This document shows positions 8,079 to 30,414 of a stretch of 34,512 bases of DNA, one piece after another (positions within the stretch are counted from its first letter, which is position 1; the number at the start of each line of letters is the position of its first letter). The stretch comes from Callorhinchus milii (taxonomy: Eukaryota). Location: the NCBI RefSeq assembly GCF_018977255.1, contig NW_024705561.1, positions 1-34,512 of the forward strand, in the 5' to 3' direction. The notes beneath the pieces are model-generated. The model saw nothing but the letters and a program-made list of their open reading frames with translations. It did not search any database and was not told the origin of the DNA. A program made the translations under genes and the position numbers.

Positions 8079-8620
8079 CTGGAAAATAAAAGCAAATATA
8101 TAATGAATGATTTCAGCCGAGATAGAGAATTCATGTTCAGGCATATGTTTAATGTTCTATATATATATATCAACACAGACACTAACACACTAAGAAGAAT
8201 AAATACACAAAAACAAATACAAATAAACAAACACACACACACACAGTCACACATACACGAATCCAACTGATTGTCTTTTAATTTTTAGTTGCTTGCTGGG
8301 AACTGTGGCAGACAGAACGATTTCATGATGCTTTAAATTGTCCACAATGTACAGACAGAGGTACATAATCTGTAGAGATCCATTAGCCCTTGCCTAGTCT
8401 ATACCAGGTGAGCATATCTCAGGTGCGATAGGGTGTGTAATGGAGAGGATATTCTCATCACCTTCACACAGCCCAGTAACAAGGAACTTGGCCTAAAAAG
8501 AAAGGGAAAGTTCTCAGCAGAGTGGTGGCAATGAGAATGACAATGAGGGTTCCTATGGAACAAGTATTCAACATCAGCTGCTACATCATATCATGGCGTC
8601 AAATAATTTATTCTCATCAC

Positions 8621-8751
8621 CTTAATTAAAGTGACGGCTGCGCTGTACATAATACTCAGGAAGAAGAGGATGATGAAGGTGGAAGCAGTAGGCCACAGGT
8701 TGTCACTTGGTACTTCTTGAAAACCTTTCAGCATCATCTCGGTTGGGAAAT
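8621..8751 (-). CDS. IgH transmembrane exon TM1: (D)FPTEMMLKGFQEVPSDNLWPTASTFIILFFLSIMYSAAVTLIK
   Basis: Acceptor TTTTTTTTATCCTAACAG; phase fits the Cmu4 internal donor; CART motif TASTFxxLFxLSxxYSxxVT; donor AAG|GTGATG. Confidence 0.92.
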
Positions 8752-10768: not shown

Positions 10769-11160
10769 TCAGTGACACGGATTCACGGTGTCCATCAGGA
10801 CAAGTGCAAGGTTTACAAAACTCGGTTTACCGCTGGATTTATTTACGGTTCTGGTCAGGGTCTTCAGTGGGAACGTTTCGTGGCCCACCACACATGAGTA
10901 GGAGGGTCTTCTGTTCCACTCATCGACTGAGAGGGTTAACATGCTGTACATGGAGTAGTTGAGATCTTCACTGTCTGCCATCACCTCGGTGTTTCTGTAC
11001 TTGTTGGCATCAATCAACTGGTCATTCACAGTCCACTGCACAAAGATCTCTTTGGGAGCGAAGTCCTTCACCAGGCAGGTCAAGGTGACAAACTGCTGAG
11101 CAGCCATTTCTTCTGCCGAGGGGAGGAGCAGATACACTGAAGGTTGTTTTGTGTACACAA
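10769..11160 (-). CDS. IGHM-like: IgH constant exon 2 (IgM Cmu4-like C1-set domain) plus secretory tailpiece GKPSFVNLALVLMDTVNPCH
   Basis: Acceptor TTCTTCCTACAG; PSVYLLLP...TLTCLVKDFAPKEIFVQW...YSCVVGHE; internal donor G|GTAAA at 10831/10830 for TM splicing; penultimate tailpiece Cys; stop at 10769-10771. Confidence 0.96.
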
Positions 11161-11650
11161 CTGTAGGAAGAATGCAATCAGATCAATACAATGATGGTGT
11201 CAATCATAGAATATTTTGAAGCATCAGATCTTGCAGAACAAGCTGAGAATAATGTTTGTGTCTCTGTTAAATCTGTGCTCAGTGGTTTGTAATTGTTGGT
11301 GTGACTAGGAACATTGGTGTGGGTTGAAATCCCCGACAGGACTTTATTATATGCACCCAGTGACCAGCGGTTCAGATATGGTAACTCTGCTCCCTGAGAA
11401 CATGTGTAAACATCCTCCAGGTGATGGTTAGATTCTTGTTGATATAATTCATGTGGGTGAATGTACTTAACAAATTTTATCTATAAATTGTTGTCCGACG
11501 TTCGTGAGAGATTATAAATCTATCGAAAGACAAACAGAAAAAGAAGCAAACAGAGAGCTGATCATTGTATTCCCAGTTGTTTCTGTTGATTGAAATCTGA
11601 AATTACAATAAACAAATAAATCATTTATTTCCTGAAATATGGCTACTCAC

Positions 11651-11962
11651 CTTTCCTCTTAAATGTCTTTTCACCGATGGGAGTTGGGATATCTTCATGA
11701 TTGGCAAGGCAGAAGAATTCTTTCCCACTCTTCCAGTCTTGTGTAGAAACGTTTAATTTACTGATCACTTCCTGAGGCTCAGTGGCAGACGTTTTCCCAT
11801 ATCCAGACTGTAAATGTGTCTTTCCTTGTGTCCAAGTCACGTTGACGTCAAGTGGTGCATTGGCCACGACACATGTCAGCGTTACAGTGGACTCCATTAA
11901 AACCTGTTGCTGCGAGGGTGGCAGGAAAGAGACCTTCACACCCCCAGTGGGTTGCTCACATT
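11651..11962 (-). CDS. IGHM-like: IgH constant exon 1 (IgM Cmu3-like C1-set domain)
   Basis: Acceptor TTTTCCTTTTCTAG, donor G|GTGAGT, 312 bp, phase 1/1; (E)CEQPTGGVKVSFLPPSQQQVLMESTVTLTCVVANAP...W...LNVSTQDWKSGKEFFCLANHEDIPTP resembles chondrichthyan Cmu3 (recognised from memory, not aligned). Confidence 0.94.
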
Positions 11963-12819
11963 CTAGAAAAGGAAAAGACACATGAAACTGGATTAACAGC
12001 CAATATCCAGGATTTCATATTCGGTCAGTTAAACAATACTGTTCATGAATATTCTCACACTGTGGGTGAGCTGAACACAGATTGCTGATTCCGAATATGC
12101 TCATCATTTGGTGTTGGAATAATTTACTGGAATACTGAACAAGACTTCCTGAAGGACTGCGTGATATTGCACCTGTTGAGTTTCAATTCCCTCTGACTGA
12201 ATACCACTCAGGAATAAACACGTGTATTGGTTGACTTGTAACTGTGCATTTAACTGTATACCTTCTCGGATTAACCCAAATTCACTCTTTGTGTCCAGGA
12301 AACAAAGTGGAAGTAATTGTTGAGGAAGTGTGTGGTATAGCTCTGCGGATAAAAGGCTGTAGATTGCGGCCCGATTTCTTCATGTTGCTCAGTTCAATAA
12401 ACTTGGGGTCAAAGCTCGCATGTGTATTGCTTTCATTGAAACACCAAAAAGGGGCGCTACACAAATGAAGGTAGCATTGTCAGGCCAAGCAGGTTCTCTG
12501 TTTGTATGTGTGTGTGTTCATGTGTGTGTATGTATGTATGTATGTATGCAGTTTTTAGAAAAGCCGCTGAAACTAAACTGTTGCATCAATTTCCTAATCG
12601 TCTGTTTCATTTGCTAAAATATTTTTGTTTCAAGGTTACTAAGACGTTTGCGTAATCTTAAATTTTGATGCAATCGTCAGAAGATTTCAAACATATTTCT
12701 TTGCGGCTCTGATATGTATTAAAACAAGTTACTCTGCTCAGATTGATGACAGAATCGACACAGTCAATGGCCACCAGACAGCCGATGTGTTTTGTTAAAA
12801 TAGTACATTAAATATTGAT

Positions 12820-12950
12820 AAGAATAATATCACTTGCATTGGAAATAGCGTCTTATCAAGTCTTTGAGATATTTCAATGCGCTTCACAGAATACAGTGTG
12901 AAGTGAAATCAGTCTATATTGTCTGTGCGAAAAATATTTGATTGACTGTT
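12820..12950 (-). mobile_element. SINE 3' tail fragment in the J-C intron
   Basis: Reverse complement reads TGAAGCGCATTGAAATATCTCAAAGACTTGATAAGACGCTATTTCCAATGCAAG, the shared tail. Confidence 0.65.
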
Positions 12951-13224
12951 GAAGAATTTTGATCCCTCTTTATTTTGTAATCTACAAAATTAGAAAACGA
13001 TTAAAATGGTTAGGTTCAGTGTTTACATGAGGAATGAAGGACTGCAATCAGTGTTGTGCCCAGGACACGGAAATACCCAACATATCTATTGGTATTTTTG
13101 TCGCAATCAGCTGTGAAATGGTTAAATAAAGGCAGAAGCCGCTGTCCGGCGTTTGATGTTAGTGACGGTGCATTGCCTAACGGGCAAAGCAATATTACAT
13201 TCACATTTGAAACTATAAATAGAA

Positions 13225-13605
13225 TATTCCTTGCATTTGTTATAGCGACATATCACGTCTTTGAGACGTCTCCAACTGCTTCAAAGAATACACTGTAAAG
13301 TGAATTCACTGTATGTTTGAGGGCGAAATGCGGCATCCAAATGCGTACAGCAGTTTTCCACAAACAGTCGTGGATTCAGTGACAAATTTATTGTTAATAT
13401 TTTGAAGAGAGTAATACTTCCGGGGAAGCAATCGGTTGATTGACTAACAGGTGTGTTGCTACGTACTGTAAGGCAAACCGAATTGTTGTTGTGAGTGTGG
13501 AGTAAGTAGACTTTCCTGACTTTTCGCCCTGCCCGGGAATCAAACACAGGTTGTCTATCCTGCGAGGCGAGTGCTCTAAACTCTGAGCTATAGGACTCCA
13601 CAGAG
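13225..13605 (-). mobile_element. Full-length tRNA-derived SINE in the J-C intron
   Basis: Head TAGCTCAGAGTTTAGAGCACTCGCC...GTTTGATTCCCGGGCAGGGCGAAA; tail GAGACGTCTCAAAGACGTGATATGTCGCTATAACAAATGCAAGG. Confidence 0.8.
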
Positions 13606-14656
13606 TGGAAAACATTCTGCTTTGCTTCACAGTCTGTATTACCCTGAATTGTGTTAGATCCATGTGGTGACAGTTGAATGTCCTGTTGTCACGCTGCATT
13701 CATGCCACACAGGCTGACAGACAGAGGCCGGTGATATAAATATATAAAACAAGCAGTGCTGGTGTCTGTGGGTCTGTTTCCAGCCCCTGCGGTCACCGAC
13801 TTGTTAGCTATCAATAAATTAAATTAACTAATGATACAAATAGAGACATTATTCACTTCTGAGATCCAAATCCTCAAGTAATAATAAACATTTGTAGATT
13901 ATAAAACTTTACTTTAAGATTTCGCGGAAGTGTATAATAATCTTAAATTTACTTTAAATTTGGATTCCGGTTCTTCTTAAGAATTCGGGAAACCTCTTTT
14001 TAGAAATCAATCTGAATTTAACAAATATTTACAAATCTGCGGGATTGACGTCAGTTCATGTTTCGACCTCTGGAAAGATATTTTGTGAAACAAACCTTCA
14101 CATTGCTCTTTCCTATCCCTCGATCTGAAGGTTAAACTTGAACCGAGCTCACAGCCGCTCTCCCCACAGTGAGATATCCCCGTTCAGCAATTTGCAATTA
14201 CACTGTTCAATGCCGTTTACTCAGGTCTCACACACAGTCACAGCCTGAACCCTCACATCTTAAACACACATTGTTTCCATCCAATTACCCACAGGTCACT
14301 CCATGTTCTCCTTCCCTCAGCCTGAAGCTGTCAGTAACCGCACAGCAGCTCACACATTCTCCATCCACATCACACACGATGCATTCTACATTTTGCAAAG
14401 TAACTCACGGACACAATTCCCTGCAGCTCAAACAGTTACACAGAATACCTAATTCATGTATTTACAGTGGAATGAGCTACTGATTCCTTTCACGCTCATC
14501 TCTGCTGAGTCTGGAGTTTGAGCTGGTCAGTTTTGGTACCATTAGCTGCATGTCTGTGACCAGTTTCGCTGTGTGTTAACCATCTCATAAACAAATGTAT
14601 CTGATACATTGCAGCGTGTTATTCAGAGTTTACCATTTGTTTACTCAAAAAAAAAA

Positions 14657-14664
14657 ATTTGCAT
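14657..14664 (-). promoter_or_regulatory. Perfect octamer (ATGCAAAT) in the J-C intron
   Basis: ATTTGCAT on + strand; function is inferred only. Confidence 0.45.
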
Positions 14665-15709
14665 TTATTTCTGCTGATCAGTTAATGCAAAACAGGAAAC
14701 TCATATTTGTAGATCAACAGATACATAGAATAACTAAAGCATGTGATTACAGTAAAATGAGAGATTTCTTCCTTTCACCCTCATCTCTGCCAACTCTGAA
14801 GTTTTAGATAATCAACTACGATATCATTAGTTTGATGTCAGCGACCAGTTTCGCTTTGTGTTGAACATGTCATTAATAATTGGATCTCTTACAATGCAGT
14901 CTGCTATTCAAACTTGAACACACGTTTGATGAATACATCTGTGTTTTTCTACACGATAGTTAGTGTAAAGCGGAAAGCTGATGATTGTAGATGAACACCG
15001 ACCTGTGTACACTCTGAGGAATGGAAGTAAGTTTAAATCAACCGCTGGCGATATCAATTGAAATGAAGCATTAAATCAAAGAGTAGCTGAATGTTATCGT
15101 GACTGGTGTATGGGCAGCTGAGGAAAAGAAACTGTGAGCAACACGTTAATGCTAATATTACTTGAAATAAAAACATTCACTCATATTTCTGTAACATTCG
15201 TGCAGATTTGAGTTGTCAGTCACACCGCAGCAATGTAAACCCGCTTTACTCTCTCACTCACCTCCTCCCAGATGAACATCTTTAACCCACAGCAGCGTTC
15301 CTTATATTAAACAACAGATTGAAATACATATCGGAATCGATCCGATAACCTTCGCGTCACTCATCCCACGATATTCAGGTCCTCATTTCCAAATCTTGGG
15401 CACAGTTTCAAACACTTTAATAGAACTCTCGGCATCATTATACCCGAAACCCAGCAGCTGCCATTCACCGCGAACAAACATTATGGAAAGTCCTTTAGAG
15501 TAATCACCAAAAATATCACCAACAAAAACTAAAGAGAATAGTACATGTTATTGAAAGCAATGGCAGGTAAAAATCTTTAGCGTCGCTTAAACTGTGAGTT
15601 TTCCCGTCCACGAAGAATTCATTACATTATATAGGTGTTAAAGTGAAAAAAAACAAATATACAAAGAGACAAGTTCAGTGAATTGAGTGAGATAATGTCT
15701 GCTACTCAC

Positions 15710-15748
15710 CATCCGTCACAGTCAACACGGTGCCTTGACCCATGTAGT
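15710..15748 (-). CDS. IGHJ: IgH J segment (Y-M-G-Q-G-T-V-L-T-V-T-D)
   Basis: GxGT-xx-TV motif, 23-RSS directly upstream, phase-1 donor G|GTGAGT. Confidence 0.93.
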
Positions 15749-15787
15749 CACTGTGCTACAGTCAGTGTGCTGCCCACTGCAACAACC
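15749..15787 (+). promoter_or_regulatory. J 23-RSS (CACTGTG / 23 bp / GCAACAACC)
   Basis: Heptamer 15749-15755, spacer 15756-15778, nonamer 15779-15787. Confidence 0.88.
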
Positions 15788-16124
15788 TGCTGTGCGGGCA
15801 GGACACACAAACACAACCTTACTGTAAATGTTGGCTCTCCCAAACCAAATACAATACCCAATATATGTCTGTAACGTTCTGAAAACAATTGCTTGACTCT
15901 GTGTTTACCTGTTAAATGTTTGCATCTTTGCCAGTTTGCAGTGTTCATGTCAAACACGTTTTATTGTGACCAACAGATTGGAGATGAAATGTAATGTTTT
16001 ATGTCTATTAAATCTGGCAATTTGCTCAGCGCTCGGCAGCATTTTACGAATAACAAATCCCCGCATATTCAGTGGGACTCACACAAGCGAACAGAGTGAG
16101 AGATTAGCTGCTTTGGTGTTGGAC

Positions 16125-16201
16125 GGTTTTTGTATTGACAGTTAATGCCGTGGTGTTTATCTCACTGTGCTGCAGTCAGTGTGCTGCCCACTGCAACAAC
16201 C
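16125..16201 (-). other. D3 segment (16153-16162, sense AGATAAACAC) with V-side 23-RSS and J-side 12-RSS
   Basis: J side: CACGGCA/12/ACAAAAACC (16152-16125). V side: CACTGTG/23/GCAACAACC (16163-16201). Confidence 0.85.
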
Positions 16202-16535
16202 TGCTGTGAGGACAAGGCACACAAATAAAATAGTAGTAAATGTTGGTTTCCCCAAACCAAATAAAGTGCACAATATATTTCTGTAATTTTCTGAAAACAA
16301 TTGCTTGGCTCTGTGTTTACCTGTTCAGTGGTTGTATTTTTGCCGGTTTGCAGCACTCATCTCAAACACATGTTGTTGTCAAGAACAGATTGAAGAATAA
16401 ATATGATGTTTTGTGTCTGTTAAAGTGGTAAAATCCTAAGCGATCGACACCATTTTACAAATGCCAGTTCCTCACGTATTCAGTGGGACCCACACAAGCG
16501 AACAGTGATAGAGATTAGCTGGTTTGGTGTTCAAG

Positions 16536-16601
16536 GGTTTTTGTATTGATTGTTAATGCTGTGTGTTGCTTGTCACAGTGATACACAATATGACAAAATC
16601 T
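16536..16601 (-). other. D2 segment (16564-16573, sense ACAAGCAACA) with 12-RSS on both sides
   Basis: J side: CACAGCA/12/ACAAAAACC (16563-16536). V side: CACAGTG/12/ACAAAATCT (16574-16601). Confidence 0.9.
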
Positions 16602-16916
16602 CCTGCACAGGACGAACTAACAAATATTGACCCGGAATTCCTGGCAACGGCTGGTCCTCAGTTCACAGAATCCTTTGATGACTCCTGTGATATTTCAGTC
16701 AGAATAAATTCTTATGTTTTCCAGAGACTTTCGTTTAATGTCCGAACAGATCCAGAGACGTCAATTTCGTTGAGTACCATCCTATAATCCAAATTAACCG
16801 CAATAAATCTGCTAAACACTATGTTATTATCGATTATCGATTATCGATTTTCAGGGCCATTTATTTCGGTGTGTCGGTGTTGTTTGATGACTGGAGTCAG
16901 CAGTCTCTGTGGCAGG

Positions 16917-16993
16917 GGTTTTTGTATGAGGAGGTGGTTGTATGCAGCATTGTGTCTTTTCTTTACACAGTGATACAGTCCAATACAAATACT
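16917..16993 (-). other. D1 segment (16955-16965, sense TAAAGAAAAGA) with V-side 12-RSS and J-side 22-RSS
   Basis: J side: CACAATG/22/ACAAAAACC (16954-16917). V side: CACAGTG/12/ACAAATACT (16966-16993). Confidence 0.92.
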
Positions 16994-17392
16994 GATCCCC
17001 CATATGTGTACAATATCGGCTGCCAAAATTCACTGAAAGTGACTATTCTCCTCTGACGTGACGCAGAATCTGTCTCATAGTTTCCTCATAACAACAGAAA
17101 CATTATGCAATTATTTCCAACAGCTTGTGACTTGGTGATGTTTTTGAACCGTCATTTATTGCGGTTCTTCCCACCTCAACAGCACAGTGTCACTGACTAT
17201 CTGAAATCACAGAATACTACAGCACAGATAAGCAGTTCATTCACTTAAATCAAACAACGATTCAATGTGCGGGATCTGTCAGATAATAAATGTATCTTCA
17301 GCTTTTCCTTTAAACTTGGGCACAAAACAGCATTGACACCATGTTTGCCCCTCAGTCAGTTTAGGGTGGGAGGGGCTGCCTTTCTCCCCTTG

Positions 17393-17431
17393 TGTATTTG
17401 TAGGAGTTCAGCCCCGTTTCGTCTCACTGTG
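17393..17431 (-). promoter_or_regulatory. V 23-RSS (CACAGTG / 23 bp / ACAAATACA)
   Basis: Consensus heptamer directly after YYCARA, 23-bp spacer, near-consensus nonamer. Confidence 0.93.
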
Positions 17432-17737
17432 ACGCTCTTGCACAATAATAGGTGGCGGTGTCGTGCACTGTCGGGCATTTGATGATCAGATCGAAGATGC
17501 TTTGGGAATCTTCTCTGATGACAGTGACACGGTTTTCAATCCCGGACCCGAATGACTCGATGGATGAGCCGTCATGTACGAGCAGCTTTTCCCGCTGCTT
17601 CCCGGGAAGCTGCCGGAACCAGCCCGTGTAATTTCTGCTGAGATCAATCCCATTGGTTTCACAGGTCAGTCTCAGGGCCTGGCCGGTTTTCCCGGTTAGA
17701 GTCGGCGGCTGTGTGAGAACCAAATCTGCCTGGACAC
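17432..17737 (-). CDS. IGHV: IgH-type V exon, open: VQA-DLVLTQPPTLTGKTGQALRLTCETNGIDLSRNYTGWFRQLPGKQREKLLVHDGSSIESFGSGIENRVTVIREDSQSIFDLIIKCPTVHDTATYYCARA
   Basis: Acceptor TTATCATTTACAG; canonical Cys22, Trp36 and DTATYYC; full-length CDR2; ends at RSS. Confidence 0.96.
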
Positions 17738-17853
17738 CTGTAAATGATAAACGGTCAAAGATTAATGACTGTGAAATGTCCTGTTTCTGTGACATTGCGG
17801 AGAGAATAACACCGACACAGGAACAGTGAGACTGTCAGAATAATAGCACTCAC

Positions 17854-17899
17854 GGGAGAAGGCAGCCAGCAACACACTGAGAGAAATCAGGGTCCTCAT
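17854..17899 (-). CDS. IgH leader exon MRTLISLSVLLAAFS(R)
   Basis: ATG at 17899, hydrophobic signal peptide, phase-1 donor C|GTGAGT, 116-bp intron in frame with V. Confidence 0.93.
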
Positions 17900-20384: not shown

Positions 20385-20654
20385 GCTGGTCATCTCAAGC
20401 TGCTAAGTCATCGCAATCCGTCAGGTCATGTCCACCTGTCTGGTCATCTCAAGCTGTCAGGTTATCCCTAAATGTCATTTCATCTCAAGCTGGTTGGTCA
20501 TCTCAAGCTCTCTGTTCATCTCAGTCTGTCTGGTCATCTCAATCTGTCCGGTCATCTCAAACTGTCTGGTCATCTCAAACTGTCTGGTCATCTCAAACTG
20601 TCAGGTCATCTCAAGCTTTCTGGTCATCTCAAACTGTCTGTTCATCTCAAGATG
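20385..20654. repeat. 18-bp minisatellite, 15 copies, no indels (consensus TCTGGTCATCTCAARCTG)
   Basis: Counted unit by unit; reads (SGHLKL)n in one + frame with one in-frame TAA. Confidence 0.95.
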
Positions 20655-21079
20655 CGTTGAGGAAGGATTTCGGAAAATATAATAAACAACAGTCAGCAGC
20701 CACTAAGCACCAGTGGCTAAGTGTGTGTCTGTGTGTTCCTCTGTGAGTGGGAGAGAGTATGTTTCTTTGTGTGTGTGTGTCTGAGTATGTTTTTTGCTGT
20801 GTGTACGTCCTCATACTGATATTCACGATGCAACCTCTATATAGTTTGATATCACCAGTGAGACTCTCTATGTATGTGCGTTTGTAGCTCTGTGTGTGGC
20901 TCTGTGTGTCTGTGTGTGTGCTGAGTGGCTGTGGCAGGTGTTATTAGCTGTGGCTGGTGTTTTAGTGGCTGTAGCTGGTGCTCAGAAACAGAAGGAGACA
21001 ATTCAGGCAATTGAGTATTTTCCGCTATTCTATAAGATCATTGCTGATCTGCAGCTCAAATCCAATTACTCGCCTTTGA

Positions 21080-22392: not shown

Positions 22393-23294
22393 TCATGATT
22401 TAATCAGCTTCAGCACTGGATTGATAACATACGCAACCATATTCTTAATTTCTTACCTGAATTTTTTTGTGTCACAGCATAAATACATATTTTTGTGGCA
22501 CTGCTTAAACGCTGAGGCATTCTTCCGGAATGATACCGAATAAAGGCTGGGTCATTATAATCTGTGTAAATATAGCTTGCTACTTGCCCACATATGATAT
22601 GTACAAAAGAGGTCATCCAAATTCAGATGAAAGTGCCCGATAGAGTGAATAGCAAAATAATAGATTTTTTCATGTTCTCTGTCTCTGGGATATTGTTACT
22701 CACATAATGTTTCTGGCTGAGAAGAACTCCGCAAATTCTGTTTGCCACAATAATGTGTCTGATAATTAGAGCTTTGAAGAGCAAAATCAGCGAATATGGA
22801 ATTAATGGGATAAAAATGATATCTACCAGATTAAATGATGCCCAAACGCATCTCGTGTGAAAGGTTTTTATCAGTTTACAGAACCAGGGAACATTATTTA
22901 TTACGAAGTTAAATTCAAACGCAAAACACCAGGGAATGTCGCTCAGACAGCTCAGTGTACACTCAATCCCTATAAACAAGGCTGCCGTTCTCTGGGTGCA
23001 ATATTGTCGTTTCAGCTTCTCACAGCAAATAATCACAAAACGATCAAATGTGAAAGCGACTGTTAACCAGACAGAGATGTCAGAAGCTGTAGCATTGGGG
23101 GAAGCTAGCGGTAGTACATGTAGCAGTCAAATCCAGGAATCCAAAAGGAAAATACAGAAAATTAATCCGAGTTTATATCACAGCATCGATAACCACGAGC
23201 AGATCTGTCGTTGACGTGGCAACAAGGTAACGAGTGCCACAGGAGGAGAGACCATACTTTCCACGGGAGAGGATCGCAATGGCAAGTAAGTTTC
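22393..23294 (-). pseudogene. GPR139/GPR142-like class A GPCR pseudogene (main exon)
   Basis: Acceptor CTGCAG then NLLAIAILSRGKYGLSSCGTRYLV...; homologous to 28884-29800; several in-frame stops (e.g. VI*, FI* at 22623-22625) and frameshifts. Confidence 0.9.
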
Positions 23295-24499: not shown

Positions 24500-26260
24500 A
24501 TACTTGCTTTAAATCAATTGAGCGTGAAAATCTGAGTCAAACGAAACCACCTATCTGATAGCTTACCAAGCCCTCTGATTTTAACGTTGTGACCCCTGGT
24601 TTAATTTCTCCAACCGGGGGCCACAATATCCCACTATCTACTCTATCATGCCCTTTGATGATCTTATTGGTTTCTATAAGATCTCCTATAATTCTTCTAT
24701 ATTCGGGAAAATATAGGCCCAAATTGCTAAGTCTATCCTAGTAACTCAACCCCTTCATCCCTGGCACTAACCTAGTAAACATACGCTGATCCGCTCCAAG
24801 GCAAGTACATCCTTCGTTCAATGAGGAGACCAAAACTGGACACATTGTTGCAGGTGTTTGTCTAACCAGAGCCCCAACCAGTTGCAGCAAGACTTCCCTA
24901 CTCTTGTACACTAATCCTTTCATAATGAATGCTAACATACCATTCGCCTTCCTAATCACTTGCTGCACCTGCAGAAGAACTTTCTGTGATTGTTGTGCAA
25001 GGACACCCAAGTCCTTCTGGACGCTAAAACATTCCAATCTCTCCCATTCTAAAAAATAACCCGCTCTTACTATTTTGCTCCTAGGAGGATGACTTCGCAC
25101 TTCCCTACATTATACTTAATCTGACACTAACCTACCTGCCCATTTACTTAACCTGCCTATGTCTCGCTGCATTTTTGTAATGCCGTCCTCTGTGTTGGCA
25201 CTTCCTCCTAGTGTTGTGTCATCCGCGCATTTAAATATGTTAACTTTGATGTCCTCATCTGGATCGTTGATGAAGATGGTAAATAGCTGAGGCCCAAGGA
25301 CTGATCCTTGTGGAACGCCACTGGTCACATCCCGACAATCTGAAAAGGACACGTTTTTCCCTACTCGTTGTTTCCTACCCGTTAACAATTCTCCAATCCA
25401 CGTTAATATGCTCCACCCAATTCCATGGGCCCTTATCTTTCGGATTAACCTTTTATGCGACACCTTATCCAATGCCTTCTGGATGTCCAAGTAGACCACA
25501 TCCACTGATTCACCTTTATCTAATTTACTGGAAATATCCTCGAAAAGCTCTATGCGATTTGTCAAACATGACTTCCCTTTTGTCAAGCAGTGTAGACTTG
25601 GCCTAATTATATTGTGCTCTCCTAAATACCGCACTACGACACCCTTAATCAACGATTCTATTTTTTTTCCTATCACTGATGTGAGAATAACAGACACATA
25701 GATACCCACCTTTTCCTTTCCACCTTTTTTACACAGCGTTGTGATATTTGCAATCTTCCAATCCATAGCGATTATGCCAGAATACAAGGAATTTTTGTAA
25801 GATCAGTCACCAGGCCTCAACTAGCTCATAAGCTACCACTTTTTAAACCCTGGTATGCAAGCCATCCAGAACAGGGGGGTTTGTCACATTTTATTGCTAA
25901 CAGTTTCCCCAGCACCAATTCTCTGCTAATGAAAATTTCCCTAAGTTGGCCCCTGTCCTTATCCTATTGGTGCATCTCTATTGTTGGCAGATTTGTTGTG
26001 TCTTCTCGGGTGAAGACAGATGCAAAGTACCCATTTAAGGACTCTGCCATGTCCTTTTTTCCCATTACAACTTCTCCCCACTCTGATTGAATTGGACCTA
26101 AGGTTTACCTTCACTAGCCTTTTCCTTTTAATGTATTTGTAAAAACGTCTCCAATCAGACGTAATGGTCCTAGCTAGCTTAACCTCATACTCTTTTACTC
26201 GCTCTTAATTACATTTTTTTGGGCTGCTTTCTAAAATTTTGACTGGTTACTGAAACTGCT
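24500..26260 (-). mobile_element. 5'-truncated CR1 LINE, frameshifted reverse transcriptase ORF2
   Basis: RT motifs YLDIQKALDKVSHKRL, GVPQGSVLGPQLFTIFIND and degenerate CADDT; continues as VQQVIRKANGMLAFI...RFTRLVPGMKGLSY in another frame. Confidence 0.93.
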
Positions 26261-28883: not shown

Positions 28884-29800
28884 TTAACGAAATACTCTAA
28901 CGACTAAAATAAACGGAAATTTTACCGCTTTACTCAGCTCCTCTCTGAACTTAGTCTGAGTAGCTGCATAAATACATGTGTTTGTACAGGAACTCAAAAG
29001 CTGCAGCATGTAGCCAGTTTCATAGAAAATAAACAACGGTTCATTCGGATCTGTGATGTTACCTGTTTTCGAAATCCTCCCGTATAAGAAAAAGGCTACT
29101 TGTGTTATCCACAATAATATAAAACTGGAGGAAACAGCAAAGAGTAAAACGATGGACTTCCTTCGGTTCTTCATCTCTGGATCACTGTCACTCGCTCCTC
29201 TGTTCCTGTCCCCATAACAGTGTCCCCACAATCGACTGCGGGCTTGACTGGCCACCAGTATGTGTCTGACTGTCAGGGCGTTGAGCAGCAAAATCAGAAA
29301 GAATGGGATAATCGGAGTTAAAGTGATATCGAACAGATCAAACGCTACCCAAATGCGAGAAATGAAAAAGTCTACTTTAAATTCGCAACCCCATGGCATA
29401 TTATTTTCTGTGTGCGATGATGTCCACACAAAATACCAGGGAATGTTTTCCCCAATCAAAAACATGATGACAACGGCTATTATAATACACGTCGATTTTT
29501 CAGTGCAATATTTGTTTTTCAGTTGTTGGCAACAAATAGCCACATATCGATCAAAAGTAAAAGTCACTGTAAGCCAAACTGAAGTTGTCGTTGATGTTGC
29601 CATCATGAAAAATAGAAGCCGACATACATGAGTAATGAACACAAATGAATTTGGAAAGTGATAAGGAATAATACGCCTGAAAATTACTTCGGTGGATACC
29701 AGCATCAGATCCGCCACTGACATGGCCACCAGATAGCGGGTGATGCATTTTGAGAGACCGCACTTCCCTCGAGACAGGATCACAATTGACGCCAGGTTAG
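28884..29800 (-). CDS. GPR139/GPR142-like rhodopsin-class GPCR, main coding exon (first exon not located)
   Basis: Acceptor TTCTCTCCCTGCAG at 29801; open frame to stop at 28884; TM2 DL, TM3 FDRY, TM6 FILLW, TM7 NTCIY. The N-terminus and most of TM1 are missing, so an upstream exon is expected. Confidence 0.88.
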
Positions 29801-30414
29801 CTGCAGGGAGAGAAGAAGAGAAATGGCAATTTATCACGATGGATTGTTACAATTTGTATGGAATTGTTTAAACGAAAGATGCGGTCTCTATTTAACAAAG
29901 CAGTAGTCTTTCCTGGTCAGTCCTTGTTCTCGAACAGTGTTGCCCCATTTTCCATCACCAAACCTGTCTGCATCACCTGCTAAATTATGTGCCATTGCCT
30001 TCAATACATCAAGCTGATTGTCCTCAGTTAATCCATGGTGTCTCAAGAGGTAAAACCTGTTATAGACTCTAAAAATGCTGATGTTAGACTGGCTGACACG
30101 GAAGAATGGAAGGACGGACGGTCGGAAGGACGGATGGAGTTAGACTGATTGACTGACTGATTAATTTGCATGGATTTTAGACTGAATGACTGGACTTCCG
30201 TTTATTTGATGGACCTGTTCTCCACTTAGAAAACGTGCAGTGGAAATAACTAGCTGACAGGCCCCTGATGTACATTTCATATGGAAGGATATTCAGAAAA
30301 TTTAAGCCAGTTTATTTTTATTTTCTTCTCTGCCCTCAGCACATATGTATTTGCTTTTCCACCTACACCAAACGAAACATCATTGATTATATCCTCATTT
30401 TTGGTGTCCTGTAT

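What the first reader, a model, noticed from the sequence alone, without database searches (positions are those of the whole stretch)
15749..16563. D3 looks like a fossil germline RAG signal joint: the D2-J spacer is duplicated exactly heptamer to heptamer
Seen: 15749-16152 (404 bp) and 16163-16563 (401 bp) are colinear copies (roughly three-quarters identical by eye); each begins at the 23-RSS heptamer and ends at the 12-RSS heptamer, and only the 10 bp of D3 separates them. D3 therefore has J's RSS on one side and D2's on the other. Inference: RAG cutting at the J RSS of one chromatid and the D2 3' RSS of the other, followed by signal-end joining with about 10 inserted nucleotides, gives exactly this structure and creates a new D. 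Established: germline RAG activity in cartilaginous fish is known from pre-joined Ig genes, and signal joints have been proposed as a source of new D segments. Caveats: unequal crossover within short coding ends can mimic this, and D3 is AT-rich for an N region.
Basis: partly seen in the sequence, partly recalled or inferred. Interest (0 to 1): 0.85.

Follow-up and report, generated by a model that had tools for sequence, protein, structure and literature searches.

The report
Duplicated spacer created third D segment
In an elephant-shark antibody gene of the light-chain-free type, the DNA between the second D segment and J has been duplicated from one recombination signal to the other, making a third D segment; this may be a relic of the recombinase acting in germ cells, but one gene copy cannot prove it.

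Summary
Window 15749-16152 and 16163-16563 are colinear copies (330 of 405 columns, 81.5% identical, z about 200). Each runs from a 23-RSS heptamer to a 12-RSS heptamer, and the 10-bp D3 lies between them. Homology stops within 1 nt at J. It runs at most 5 nt into D2/D3, which is not significant (P about 0.1).

The setting is a Callorhinchus milii IgM-derived heavy-chain-only antibody cluster on the minus strand: L-V-D1-D2-D3-J-Cmu3-Cmu4-TM, with no CH1 or CH2. This gene type was published in 2022.

It is still not proven. A duplication that carried D2 along gives the same layout, either through heptamer microhomology or through a RAG hybrid joint, and 10 nt cannot separate the models.

One new lead: D3 matches 9 of 10 bases of a 10-mer inside both spacer copies (P 0.02-0.05). 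That suggests templated filler rather than an N region.

RAG transposition is rejected because there is no target-site duplication. No paralogous C. milii clusters were reachable, and they would decide the matter.

The parts
15710..15748 (-). J segment. It encodes (D)YMGQGTVLTVTD and is followed by the splice donor GTGAGT (15709-15704).
   Evidence: Sequence reading; tblastn of C. milii IgM J residues.
15749..15787 (-). J 23-RSS: heptamer 15749-15755, 23-nt spacer, nonamer 15779-15787. This is the J-proximal end of repeat copy 1.
   Evidence: RSS scan.
15749..16152 (-). Repeat copy 1, the D3-J intersegment (404 nt), running from the 23-RSS heptamer to the 12-RSS heptamer.
   Evidence: Alignments.
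16125..16152 (-). D3 3' 12-RSS: heptamer CACGGCA at 16152-16146, 12-nt spacer, nonamer ACAAAAACC at 16133-16125.
   Evidence: RSS scan.
16153..16162 (-). D3, 10 nt. The coding strand reads AGATAAACAC.
   Evidence: It lies between two heptamers. Its similarity to D2 and J was tested.
16163..16201 (-). D3 5' 23-RSS, 39 of 40 identical to the J 23-RSS.
16163..16563 (-). Repeat copy 2, the D2-D3 intersegment (401 nt).
16536..16563 (-). D2 3' 12-RSS: heptamer CACAGCA, 12-nt spacer, nonamer ACAAAAACC.
16564..16573 (-). D2, 10 nt. The coding strand reads ACAAGCAACA.
16574..16601 (-). D2 5' 12-RSS: CACAGTG-12-ACAAAATCT as read on the + strand.
16917..16954 (-). D1 3' RSS with a 22-nt spacer: heptamer CACAATG, nonamer ACAAAAACC.
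16955..16965 (-). D1, 11 nt. The coding strand reads TAAAGAAAAGA.
16966..16993 (-). D1 5' 12-RSS.
17393..17431 (-). V 23-RSS: CACAGTG-23-ACAAATACA.
17432..17737 (-). V exon. The leader exon lies at 17854-17899. Framework 2 reads WFRQLPGKQREKLLV.
   Evidence: Pfam V-set E=1.5e-11. P0058 is the same V in UniProt C. milii models.
11651..11962 (-). Cmu3-like exon. It is the first C exon after J, and its splice phase is compatible with the J donor.
   Evidence: C1-set; tblastn to residues 348-464 of C. milii IgM.
10769..11160 (-). Cmu4-like exon with the secretory tail (GKPSFVNLALVLMDTVNPCH) and stop codon.
8618..8707 (-). Transmembrane exon (…TASTFIILFFLSIMYSAAVTLIKV).
   Evidence: tblastn with the Heterodontus membrane-form mu chain.
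15901..15910 (+). A 10-mer, GTGTTTACCT, inside copy 1 that matches D3 at 9 of 10 positions. Its homologue in copy 2 lies at 16313-16322.

Best explanation
Shown: D3 is a real, RSS-flanked third D segment. It was made when the whole D2-J intersegment (12-RSS, about 330 nt of spacer, 23-RSS) was duplicated in tandem, with both ends of the duplication at heptamer/coding borders.

Inferred: RAG acted in the germ line and cut the D2 3' 12-RSS on one chromatid (or cluster) and the J 23-RSS on the other, which is the physiological 12/23 pair. The two signal ends were then joined in trans, so the signal joint stayed in the chromosome instead of being lost on a circle. Ten nucleotides of filler were trapped between the heptamers and became D3. 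I suggest the filler was templated from a 10-mer about 250 nt inside the spacer rather than added by TdT.

Consequences for recombination:
- The new element has a 23-RSS on its 5' side and a 12-RSS on its 3' side, so the 12/23 rule allows D2 to D3 to J, or D2 to J directly.
- V and D1 cannot reach D3 directly.
- The cluster can therefore make four joins, as IgNAR does, lengthening CDR3 in an antibody that binds without a light chain.
For: - Two colinear copies at 81.5% identity, each bounded by heptamers.
- Homology ends 1 nt from the J heptamer. The 4-5 nt extension into D2/D3 is at chance level (P 0.09-0.12 for random 10-mers, 0.45 for T-rich ones).
- D3 is not J-like (2 of 10 by eye; the J-side flank matches at 8 of 40).
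- An ungapped D2 copy is 3 of 10 identical, where about 8 of 10 is expected (binomial P about 0.001, my calculation). A gapped D2 copy evolving at the spacer's rate would be this dissimilar with P 0.05-0.12.
- D3 matches, 9 of 10 on the same strand, a 10-mer present at homologous positions in both copies. The match is confined to the 10 nt (P 0.017-0.053). D1, D2 and the J end show no such match.
- Both 23-RSSs are 39 of 40 identical, against about 80% elsewhere, so both are probably under selection and D3 is probably in use.
- Germline RAG joining is documented in cartilaginous fish, and this exact route to new D segments was proposed by Lewis and Wu (PMC2193153).
- A germline VDD-joined cluster was seen here in Chiloscyllium punctatum (L001).
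Against: - Signal joints are normally precise (PMC2193153). A 10-nt insert is unusually long, and trans recombination is much rarer than cis (my own knowledge).
- D3 is 30% G+C and A-rich on the coding strand, like D1 and D2. That fits a D-derived sequence or later selection as well as it fits filler.
- D3 has the same length as D2 (10 nt).
- The internal 10-mer match was found post hoc and has only P about 0.02-0.05.
- No reciprocal D2-J-joined cluster and no paralogous or orthologous cluster could be examined.
- All discriminating information rests on 10 nucleotides.
Confidence: 0.4

Rival explanations
1. Ordinary tandem duplication without RAG. Unequal exchange or replication slippage occurred between the J 23-RSS heptamer and the D2 5' 12-RSS heptamer. 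These lie in the same orientation and share GTCAC(A/T)GTG. The event duplicated the unit [23-RSS ... 12-RSS + D2], so D3 is a D2 paralogue that has since diverged.
For: - Start-to-start spacing is 411-414 nt, with the array ending at D2 next to a heptamer that resembles the one at its start.
- The microhomology GTCAC is present at both borders.
- D3 and D2 are both 10 nt long and A-rich on the coding strand, as D1 is.
- There is a 4-5 nt match next to the 12-RSS heptamer.
- Tandem duplication is common and needs no special enzyme (my own knowledge).
Against: - D3 against D2 is 3 of 10 ungapped (binomial P about 0.001 at 80% expected identity). Gapped, the similarity is no better than chance, and it is low for a copy of this age (P 0.05-0.12). 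This model therefore needs strongly accelerated divergence confined to the 10 nt while the neighbouring RSSs stayed conserved.
- Both breakpoints landing exactly on heptamer borders must be ascribed to a 5-9 nt microhomology among many available ones.
- It does not explain the 9 of 10 match to the spacer-internal 10-mer.
Confidence: 0.3
2. RAG-mediated trans hybrid joint. RAG cut the D2 5' 12-RSS on one chromatid and the J 23-RSS on the other. The J-RSS signal end was then joined to the D2 5' coding end. D3 is a D2 copy whose 5' end was trimmed or filled during hairpin processing, while its 3' end and 12-RSS stayed intact.
For: - It gives exactly the observed layout and obeys the 12/23 rule.
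- The only D2-D3 similarity lies at the 3' end (coding strand AACA next to the 12-RSS heptamer), while the 5' halves differ.
- A germline hybrid joint has been inferred in shark clusters before (PMC2193153).
Against: - Hybrid joints are a minor outcome, and in trans rarer still (my own knowledge).
- The 3' match needs a 1-nt slip and is not significant.
- No P-nucleotide palindrome of the D2 5' end is visible in D3.
Confidence: 0.15
3. RAG transposition. The excised signal-ended D2-J fragment was reinserted into the ancestral D2, splitting it into D2 and D3.
For: It would also give a 12/12 D followed by a 23/12 D, with a heptamer-to-heptamer copy of the spacer. RAG can transpose signal-ended DNA in vitro (PMC2193153).
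Against: Transposition predicts a 3-5 bp target-site duplication, that is, the last bases of D2 should equal the first bases of D3 on the coding strand. CAACA against AGATA matches at 2 of 5 (sequence).
Confidence: 0.03

Closest known systems
De novo D segments from germline intercluster signal joints with junctional insertions (Lewis and Wu 2000, J Exp Med 191:1631, Fig. 2B-ii; PMC2193153)
   Same: A 12-RSS and a 23-RSS lie head to head with a short insert between the heptamers, and each RSS is followed by the sequence that normally flanks D2 or J. This is the structure that model predicts.
   Different: That was a proposal without an example; the authors stated that only scenarios i and iii had evidence from sharks. 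Here the insert is 10 nt, A/T-rich and possibly templated, and the joint type is not proven.
Germline-joined (VD-J, VDD-J, VDJ) Ig clusters of cartilaginous fish
   Same: Both would be relics of RAG acting in germ cells on the same kind of minilocus. A VDD-joined example was seen in Chiloscyllium punctatum, L001 9530-9610.
   Different: Those are coding joints that remove segments and reduce diversity. This would be the retained reciprocal product, which adds a segment.
IgNAR clusters (V-D1-D2-D3-J)
   Same: Three D segments and up to four rearrangements, concentrating diversity in CDR3 of a light-chain-free antibody (PMC5192425).
   Different: A different isotype (IgW-related C exons, NAR-type V) found in elasmobranchs. 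Here the C exons are IgM-type and the V is VH-type, in a holocephalan. I could not check whether IgNAR D spacers show the same repeat.
Holocephalan IgM-derived heavy-chain-only antibody genes (Anumukonda, Francis, Currie, Tulenko, Hsu 2022, Eur J Immunol 52:247; cited in PMC12227049 and PMC11659936)
   Same: Same species group, VH-type V with VHH-like framework-2 residues, no CH1, IgM-type C exons.
   Different: The paper is not in the held library, so I could not check whether it already describes this cluster, its three D segments or the spacer duplication.

Membership tests
Retained RAG signal joint (germline fossil) | A 12-RSS and a 23-RSS heptamer lie head to head, nonamers outward. | tested here: met
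   Heptamers at 16146-16152 and 16163-16169, with nonamers at 16125-16133 and 16193-16201.
Retained RAG signal joint (germline fossil) | The DNA behind each RSS is the DNA that flanks the partner coding segments (D2 3' side, J 5' side). | tested here: met
   Colinear copies, 81.5% identical over about 400 nt.
Retained RAG signal joint (germline fossil) | Heptamers are fused precisely or with only a few added bases, with no coding-segment bases at the joint. | tested here: inconclusive
   There are 10 nt between the heptamers. Their similarity to D2 is at chance level (P about 0.1) but a diverged D2 copy is not excluded; there is no similarity to J.
Retained RAG signal joint (germline fossil) | A reciprocal coding-joint product (germline D2-J-joined cluster) exists in the lineage. 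| not testable with these tools
   No C. milii genomic paralogues were retrievable. The gene models P0005 and P0007, with contiguous V-J, are only leads.
Functional D gene segment | RSSs on both sides, with CAC heptamers, A-rich nonamers and 12- or 23-nt spacers compatible with the neighbouring segments. | tested here: met
   5' 23-RSS (heptamer 7/7 on the coding strand, nonamer 7/9) and 3' 12-RSS (heptamer CACGGCA, nonamer 9/9). The order is V23 / 12-D1-22 / 12-D2-12 / 23-D3-12 / 23-J.
Functional D gene segment | Use in rearranged transcripts. | not testable with these tools
   No cDNA of this cluster type was found in the protein collection.
Simple tandem duplication (unequal exchange or slippage) | Adjacent copies with nothing foreign at the junction, meaning D3 is homologous to D2 (or to the J end). 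| tested here: inconclusive
   D3 against D2 is 3 of 10 ungapped, or about 6 of 11 with two gaps, which is not above chance. D3 against the J end is 2 of 10.
Simple tandem duplication (unequal exchange or slippage) | Microhomology at the two breakpoints. | tested here: met
   GTCAC(T/A)GTG is present at the J/23-RSS border and at the D2/5' 12-RSS border.
RAG transposon insertion | A 3-5 bp target-site duplication flanks the RSS-ended insert. | tested here: not met
   CAACA (D2 3' end) against AGATA (D3 5' end) matches at 2 of 5.
Holocephalan IgM-type heavy-chain-only antibody gene | A rearranging VH-type cluster whose C region lacks CH1. | tested here: met
   tblastn with C. milii, Hydrolagus and other IgM chains finds V, J, Cmu3 and Cmu4 only, with nothing for Cmu1 or Cmu2 in the 3.7 kb between J and Cmu3. 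Splice phases fit.
Holocephalan IgM-type heavy-chain-only antibody gene | Hydrophilic substitutions at the VH-VL interface positions of framework 2. | tested here: met
   WFRQLPGKQREKLL here, against WVRQVPGKGLEWLL in conventional C. milii IgM P0001.
Holocephalan IgM-type heavy-chain-only antibody gene | The protein is secreted without a light chain. | not testable with these tools
   This needs protein work.

The most novel reading that the evidence does not exclude
D3 is the first physical example of a D gene segment born from a chromosomally retained germline RAG signal joint, the reciprocal product of germline D-J joining. Its coding bases were supplied by templated filler copied from the adjacent spacer. 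This would show that RAG activity in germ cells can add recombining segments as well as remove them.
Probability: 0.35. Interest if true: 0.8.

Novelty: new variant of a known kind. Interest (0 to 1): 0.55.

Why it matters
How D segments arose, apparently several times, is an open question in the evolution of antigen-receptor loci. The two standing ideas are paired transposon insertions and signal joints with insertions, and neither has a documented example.

This locus has the layout the signal-joint idea predicts. It also lies in a gene family with many paralogues and a slowly evolving genome, so comparing clusters could settle the question directly.

It also shows how a light-chain-free antibody gene acquired the extra D that lengthens CDR3, in parallel with IgNAR.

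Tried and rejected
- A third, degenerate repeat copy covering J and the J-C intron. It was suggested by a 27-nt, 74% match at spacing 409, but it is not supported (z about 1).
- Homology of the D1-D2 or V-D1 spacers to the repeat, direct or inverted, testing for an older duplication or a hybrid-joint inversion. There is none beyond the nonamer.
- Conservation of the spacer with an elasmobranch D-J spacer (L001). Only the nonamer matches.
- RAG transposition. There is no target-site duplication.
- Assembly artefact. Rejected because of the 18% divergence.
- Retrieval of paralogous C. milii clusters. The V-exon protein search found only UniProt models without contigs, and look-up of P0007 returned nothing on record.
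- Reading the key 2022 paper. Three identifiers were tried and none is held. Roux 1998 was tried under a guessed PMC id and is also not held.
- I ran no further search on IgNAR loci. Spacers that old are unlikely to align, and a negative result would say nothing.

Full report
**What the window is.** Protein searches place the window in Callorhinchus milii, the elephant shark, a holocephalan. The best hits are C. milii Ig models at 94-97% identity, and P0058 is this window's own V.

One Ig minilocus lies on the minus strand:

| Element | Coordinates |
|---|---|
| Leader | 17899-17854 |
| V exon | 17737-17432 |
| D1 | 16965-16955 |
| D2 | 16573-16564 |
| D3 | 16162-16153 |
| J | 15748-15710 |
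| Cmu3-like exon | 11962-11651 |
| Cmu4-like exon with secretory tail | 11160-10769 |
| Transmembrane exon | about 8707-8618 |

All exons are open and their splice phases fit. tblastn with four full-length holocephalan and other IgM chains finds no trace of Cmu1 or Cmu2 between J and Cmu3.

Framework 2 of the V reads WFRQLPGKQREKLL, where conventional C. milii IgM has WVRQVPGKGLEWLL. These are the four positions that distinguish camelid VHH (my own knowledge).

This is therefore a holocephalan IgM-derived heavy-chain-only antibody gene. That type is reported by Anumukonda et al. 2022, which is cited in PMC12227049 and alluded to in PMC11659936. I could not obtain the paper.

**The observation.**
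- 330 of 405 columns are identical (81.5%), with 5 gap columns and a K2P distance of about 0.20.
- The local score is about 200 standard deviations above shuffles.

An independent RSS scan finds eight signals and no others in the cluster. The resulting order is V-23 / 12-D1-22 / 12-D2-12 / 23-D3-12 / 23-J.

Copy 1 runs from the J 23-RSS heptamer to the D3 3' 12-RSS heptamer. Copy 2 runs from the D3 5' 23-RSS heptamer to the D2 3' 12-RSS heptamer. Ten bases, D3, lie between them.

**Where homology stops.**
- On the J side the local alignment extends one base beyond the heptamer. The next 40 bases match at 8 of 40.
- On the D2 side it extends through GTGTT against TGTT with a one-base slip.
- I simulated that extension. 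Random 10-mers do as well in 9-12% of trials, and T-rich ones in 45%.
- A D2 copy evolving at the spacer's own rate would be this dissimilar in only 5-12% of trials. Ungapped identity is 3 of 10, where about 8 is expected (binomial P about 0.001, my calculation).
- D3 is also unlike the J end (2 of 10).

Equally, 10 nt cannot prove non-homology.

**Models that give this layout.**

| Model | Event | What D3 would be |
|---|---|---|
| M2 | Non-RAG tandem duplication of [23-RSS ... 12-RSS + D2] through the GTCAC(A/T)GTG shared by the J heptamer border and the D2 5' heptamer border | A diverged D2 copy |
| M3 | Trans hybrid joint of the J-RSS signal end to the D2 5' coding end | D2 with a processed 5' end |
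| M4 | RAG transposition of the excised spacer into D2 | The distal part of a split D2 |

M4 predicts a target-site duplication, D2 3' end equal to D3 5' end. That is absent: CAACA against AGATA.

How the evidence bears on M1 to M3:
- M1 explains the exact borders and the lack of D2 or J similarity, but it needs an unusually long insert.
- M2 needs several-fold accelerated divergence confined to 10 nt while the adjoining 23-RSS stayed 39 of 40 identical.
- M3 fits the fact that the only D2-like bases are at the D3 3' end, but that match is not significant.

**A new lead.**
- D3 (+ strand GTGTTTATCT) matches a 10-mer, GTGTTTACCT, at 9 of 10 positions on the same strand.
- That 10-mer is present at homologous positions in both copies (15901-15910 and 16313-16322), so it predates the duplication.
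- The match is confined to the 10 nt.
- The chance of such a hit in a 404-nt copy is 0.017 with genomic composition, or 0.053 permuting D3's own letters.
- D1, D2 and the J end have no comparable hit.

If real, D3 is templated filler copied from the spacer at the joint. The match was found post hoc and is weak, so I treat it as a lead only.

**Other checks.**
- The D1-D2 and V-D1 spacers and the J-C intron show no homology to the repeat in either orientation. There are exactly two copies, and there is no sign of an older array or an inverted copy.
- The spacer is not conserved with the D-J spacer of a bamboo-shark IgM cluster. That cluster is itself germline VDD-joined.
- All three D segments are A-rich on the coding strand and encode hydrophilic residues: KEK and KKR for D1; TSN, QAT and KQ for D2; DKH and IN for D3. 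D1 and D3 each have a stop in one frame.

**How it would work.** Under the 12/23 rule, D3 can be reached only from D2, and D3 can join J. D2 can also join J directly. With D3 the cluster can make four joins, as IgNAR does (PMC5192425), lengthening and diversifying CDR3 of a single-domain binding site. The near-identity of the two 23-RSSs suggests that both are maintained.

**Comparison with what is known.** Lewis and Wu (PMC2193153) drew exactly this origin for D segments and stated that only their other two scenarios, germline coding joints and a hybrid-joint inversion, had evidence from sharks. The gene type is known, and three-D clusters are known from IgNAR. A retained germline signal joint as the source of a D segment has, as far as I could find, no documented case. 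I could not check whether the 2022 paper noticed the spacer duplication.

| Explanation | My weight |
|---|---|
| M1, trans signal joint | about 0.4 |
| M2, non-RAG tandem duplication | about 0.3 |
| M3, trans hybrid joint | about 0.15 |
| Transposition and anything else | the remainder |

RAG involvement of some kind is therefore a little better than even. The question can be decided by comparing paralogous and orthologous clusters, which these tools could not reach.

Noticed in passing
window 10769-17899, minus strand: The cluster has no Cmu1 or Cmu2 exon, and J splices in phase to a Cmu3-like exon that begins with a cysteine (ECEQPTGG). Framework 2 of the V carries VHH-like residues (F37, Q44, R45, K47 by analogy). 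This is a 'short' IgM-type heavy-chain-only antibody gene with both a secretory tail and a TM exon.
   Followed up: partly
window 15710-15748: The J encodes DYMGQGTVLTVTD, with Met where the conserved interface Trp (WGxG) normally sits. The related C. milii model P0007 has Val at that position.
   Followed up: no
window 15749-15795 vs 16163-16209: The 23-RSS ends of the two copies are 46 of 47 identical, including the 23-nt spacer and 8 nt beyond the nonamer, against about 80% elsewhere. This points to selection on the whole RSS or to gene conversion.
   Followed up: partly
window 15885-15915 and 16297-16327: This is the best conserved internal block of the spacer (29 of 30). It contains the D3-like 10-mer and, on the minus strand, a cryptic heptamer CACAGAG. 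In copy 2 the cryptic heptamer has a weak nonamer at 24 nt (16315-16276). It could be a relic D/RSS or a regulatory site.
   Followed up: no
proteins P0005, P0007, P0008 (C. milii UniProt models): These are gene models of the same V family with V and J contiguous (for example YYCQIKTHDYVGRGTVLTVTD), spliced to Cmu2 or directly to Cmu4. They may be germline-joined heavy-chain-only clusters, and so candidates for the reciprocal product. Their loci could not be fetched.
   Followed up: partly
L001 9530-10020 (Chiloscyllium punctatum BEZZ01000461.1): This bamboo-shark IgM cluster is germline VDD-joined. The V runs on through about 25 nt of D-like sequence into a 12-RSS (CACTGCA-12-ACAAAAACC), followed by about 370 nt and then a J preceded by the heptamer CACTGTG.
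   Followed up: partly
window 28887-29837 (-), 22626-23036 (-): An intronless rhodopsin-family 7TM receptor ORF of 317 aa (Pfam 7tm_1, E=7e-24) lies upstream of the Ig cluster. A shorter ORF resembling part of it (similar by eye, no Pfam hit) lies at 22626-23036.
   Followed up: partly
window 25119-25787 (-), 20385-20655: A reverse-transcriptase fragment of a retroelement (RVT_1, E=2e-17) and an 18-nt-period minisatellite (about 15 copies).
   Followed up: no
protein P0041: A 232-aa 'hypothetical protein' filed under Aeromonas veronii is 50% identical to this IgM constant region. It is probably fish-host DNA contaminating a bacterial assembly.
   Followed up: no
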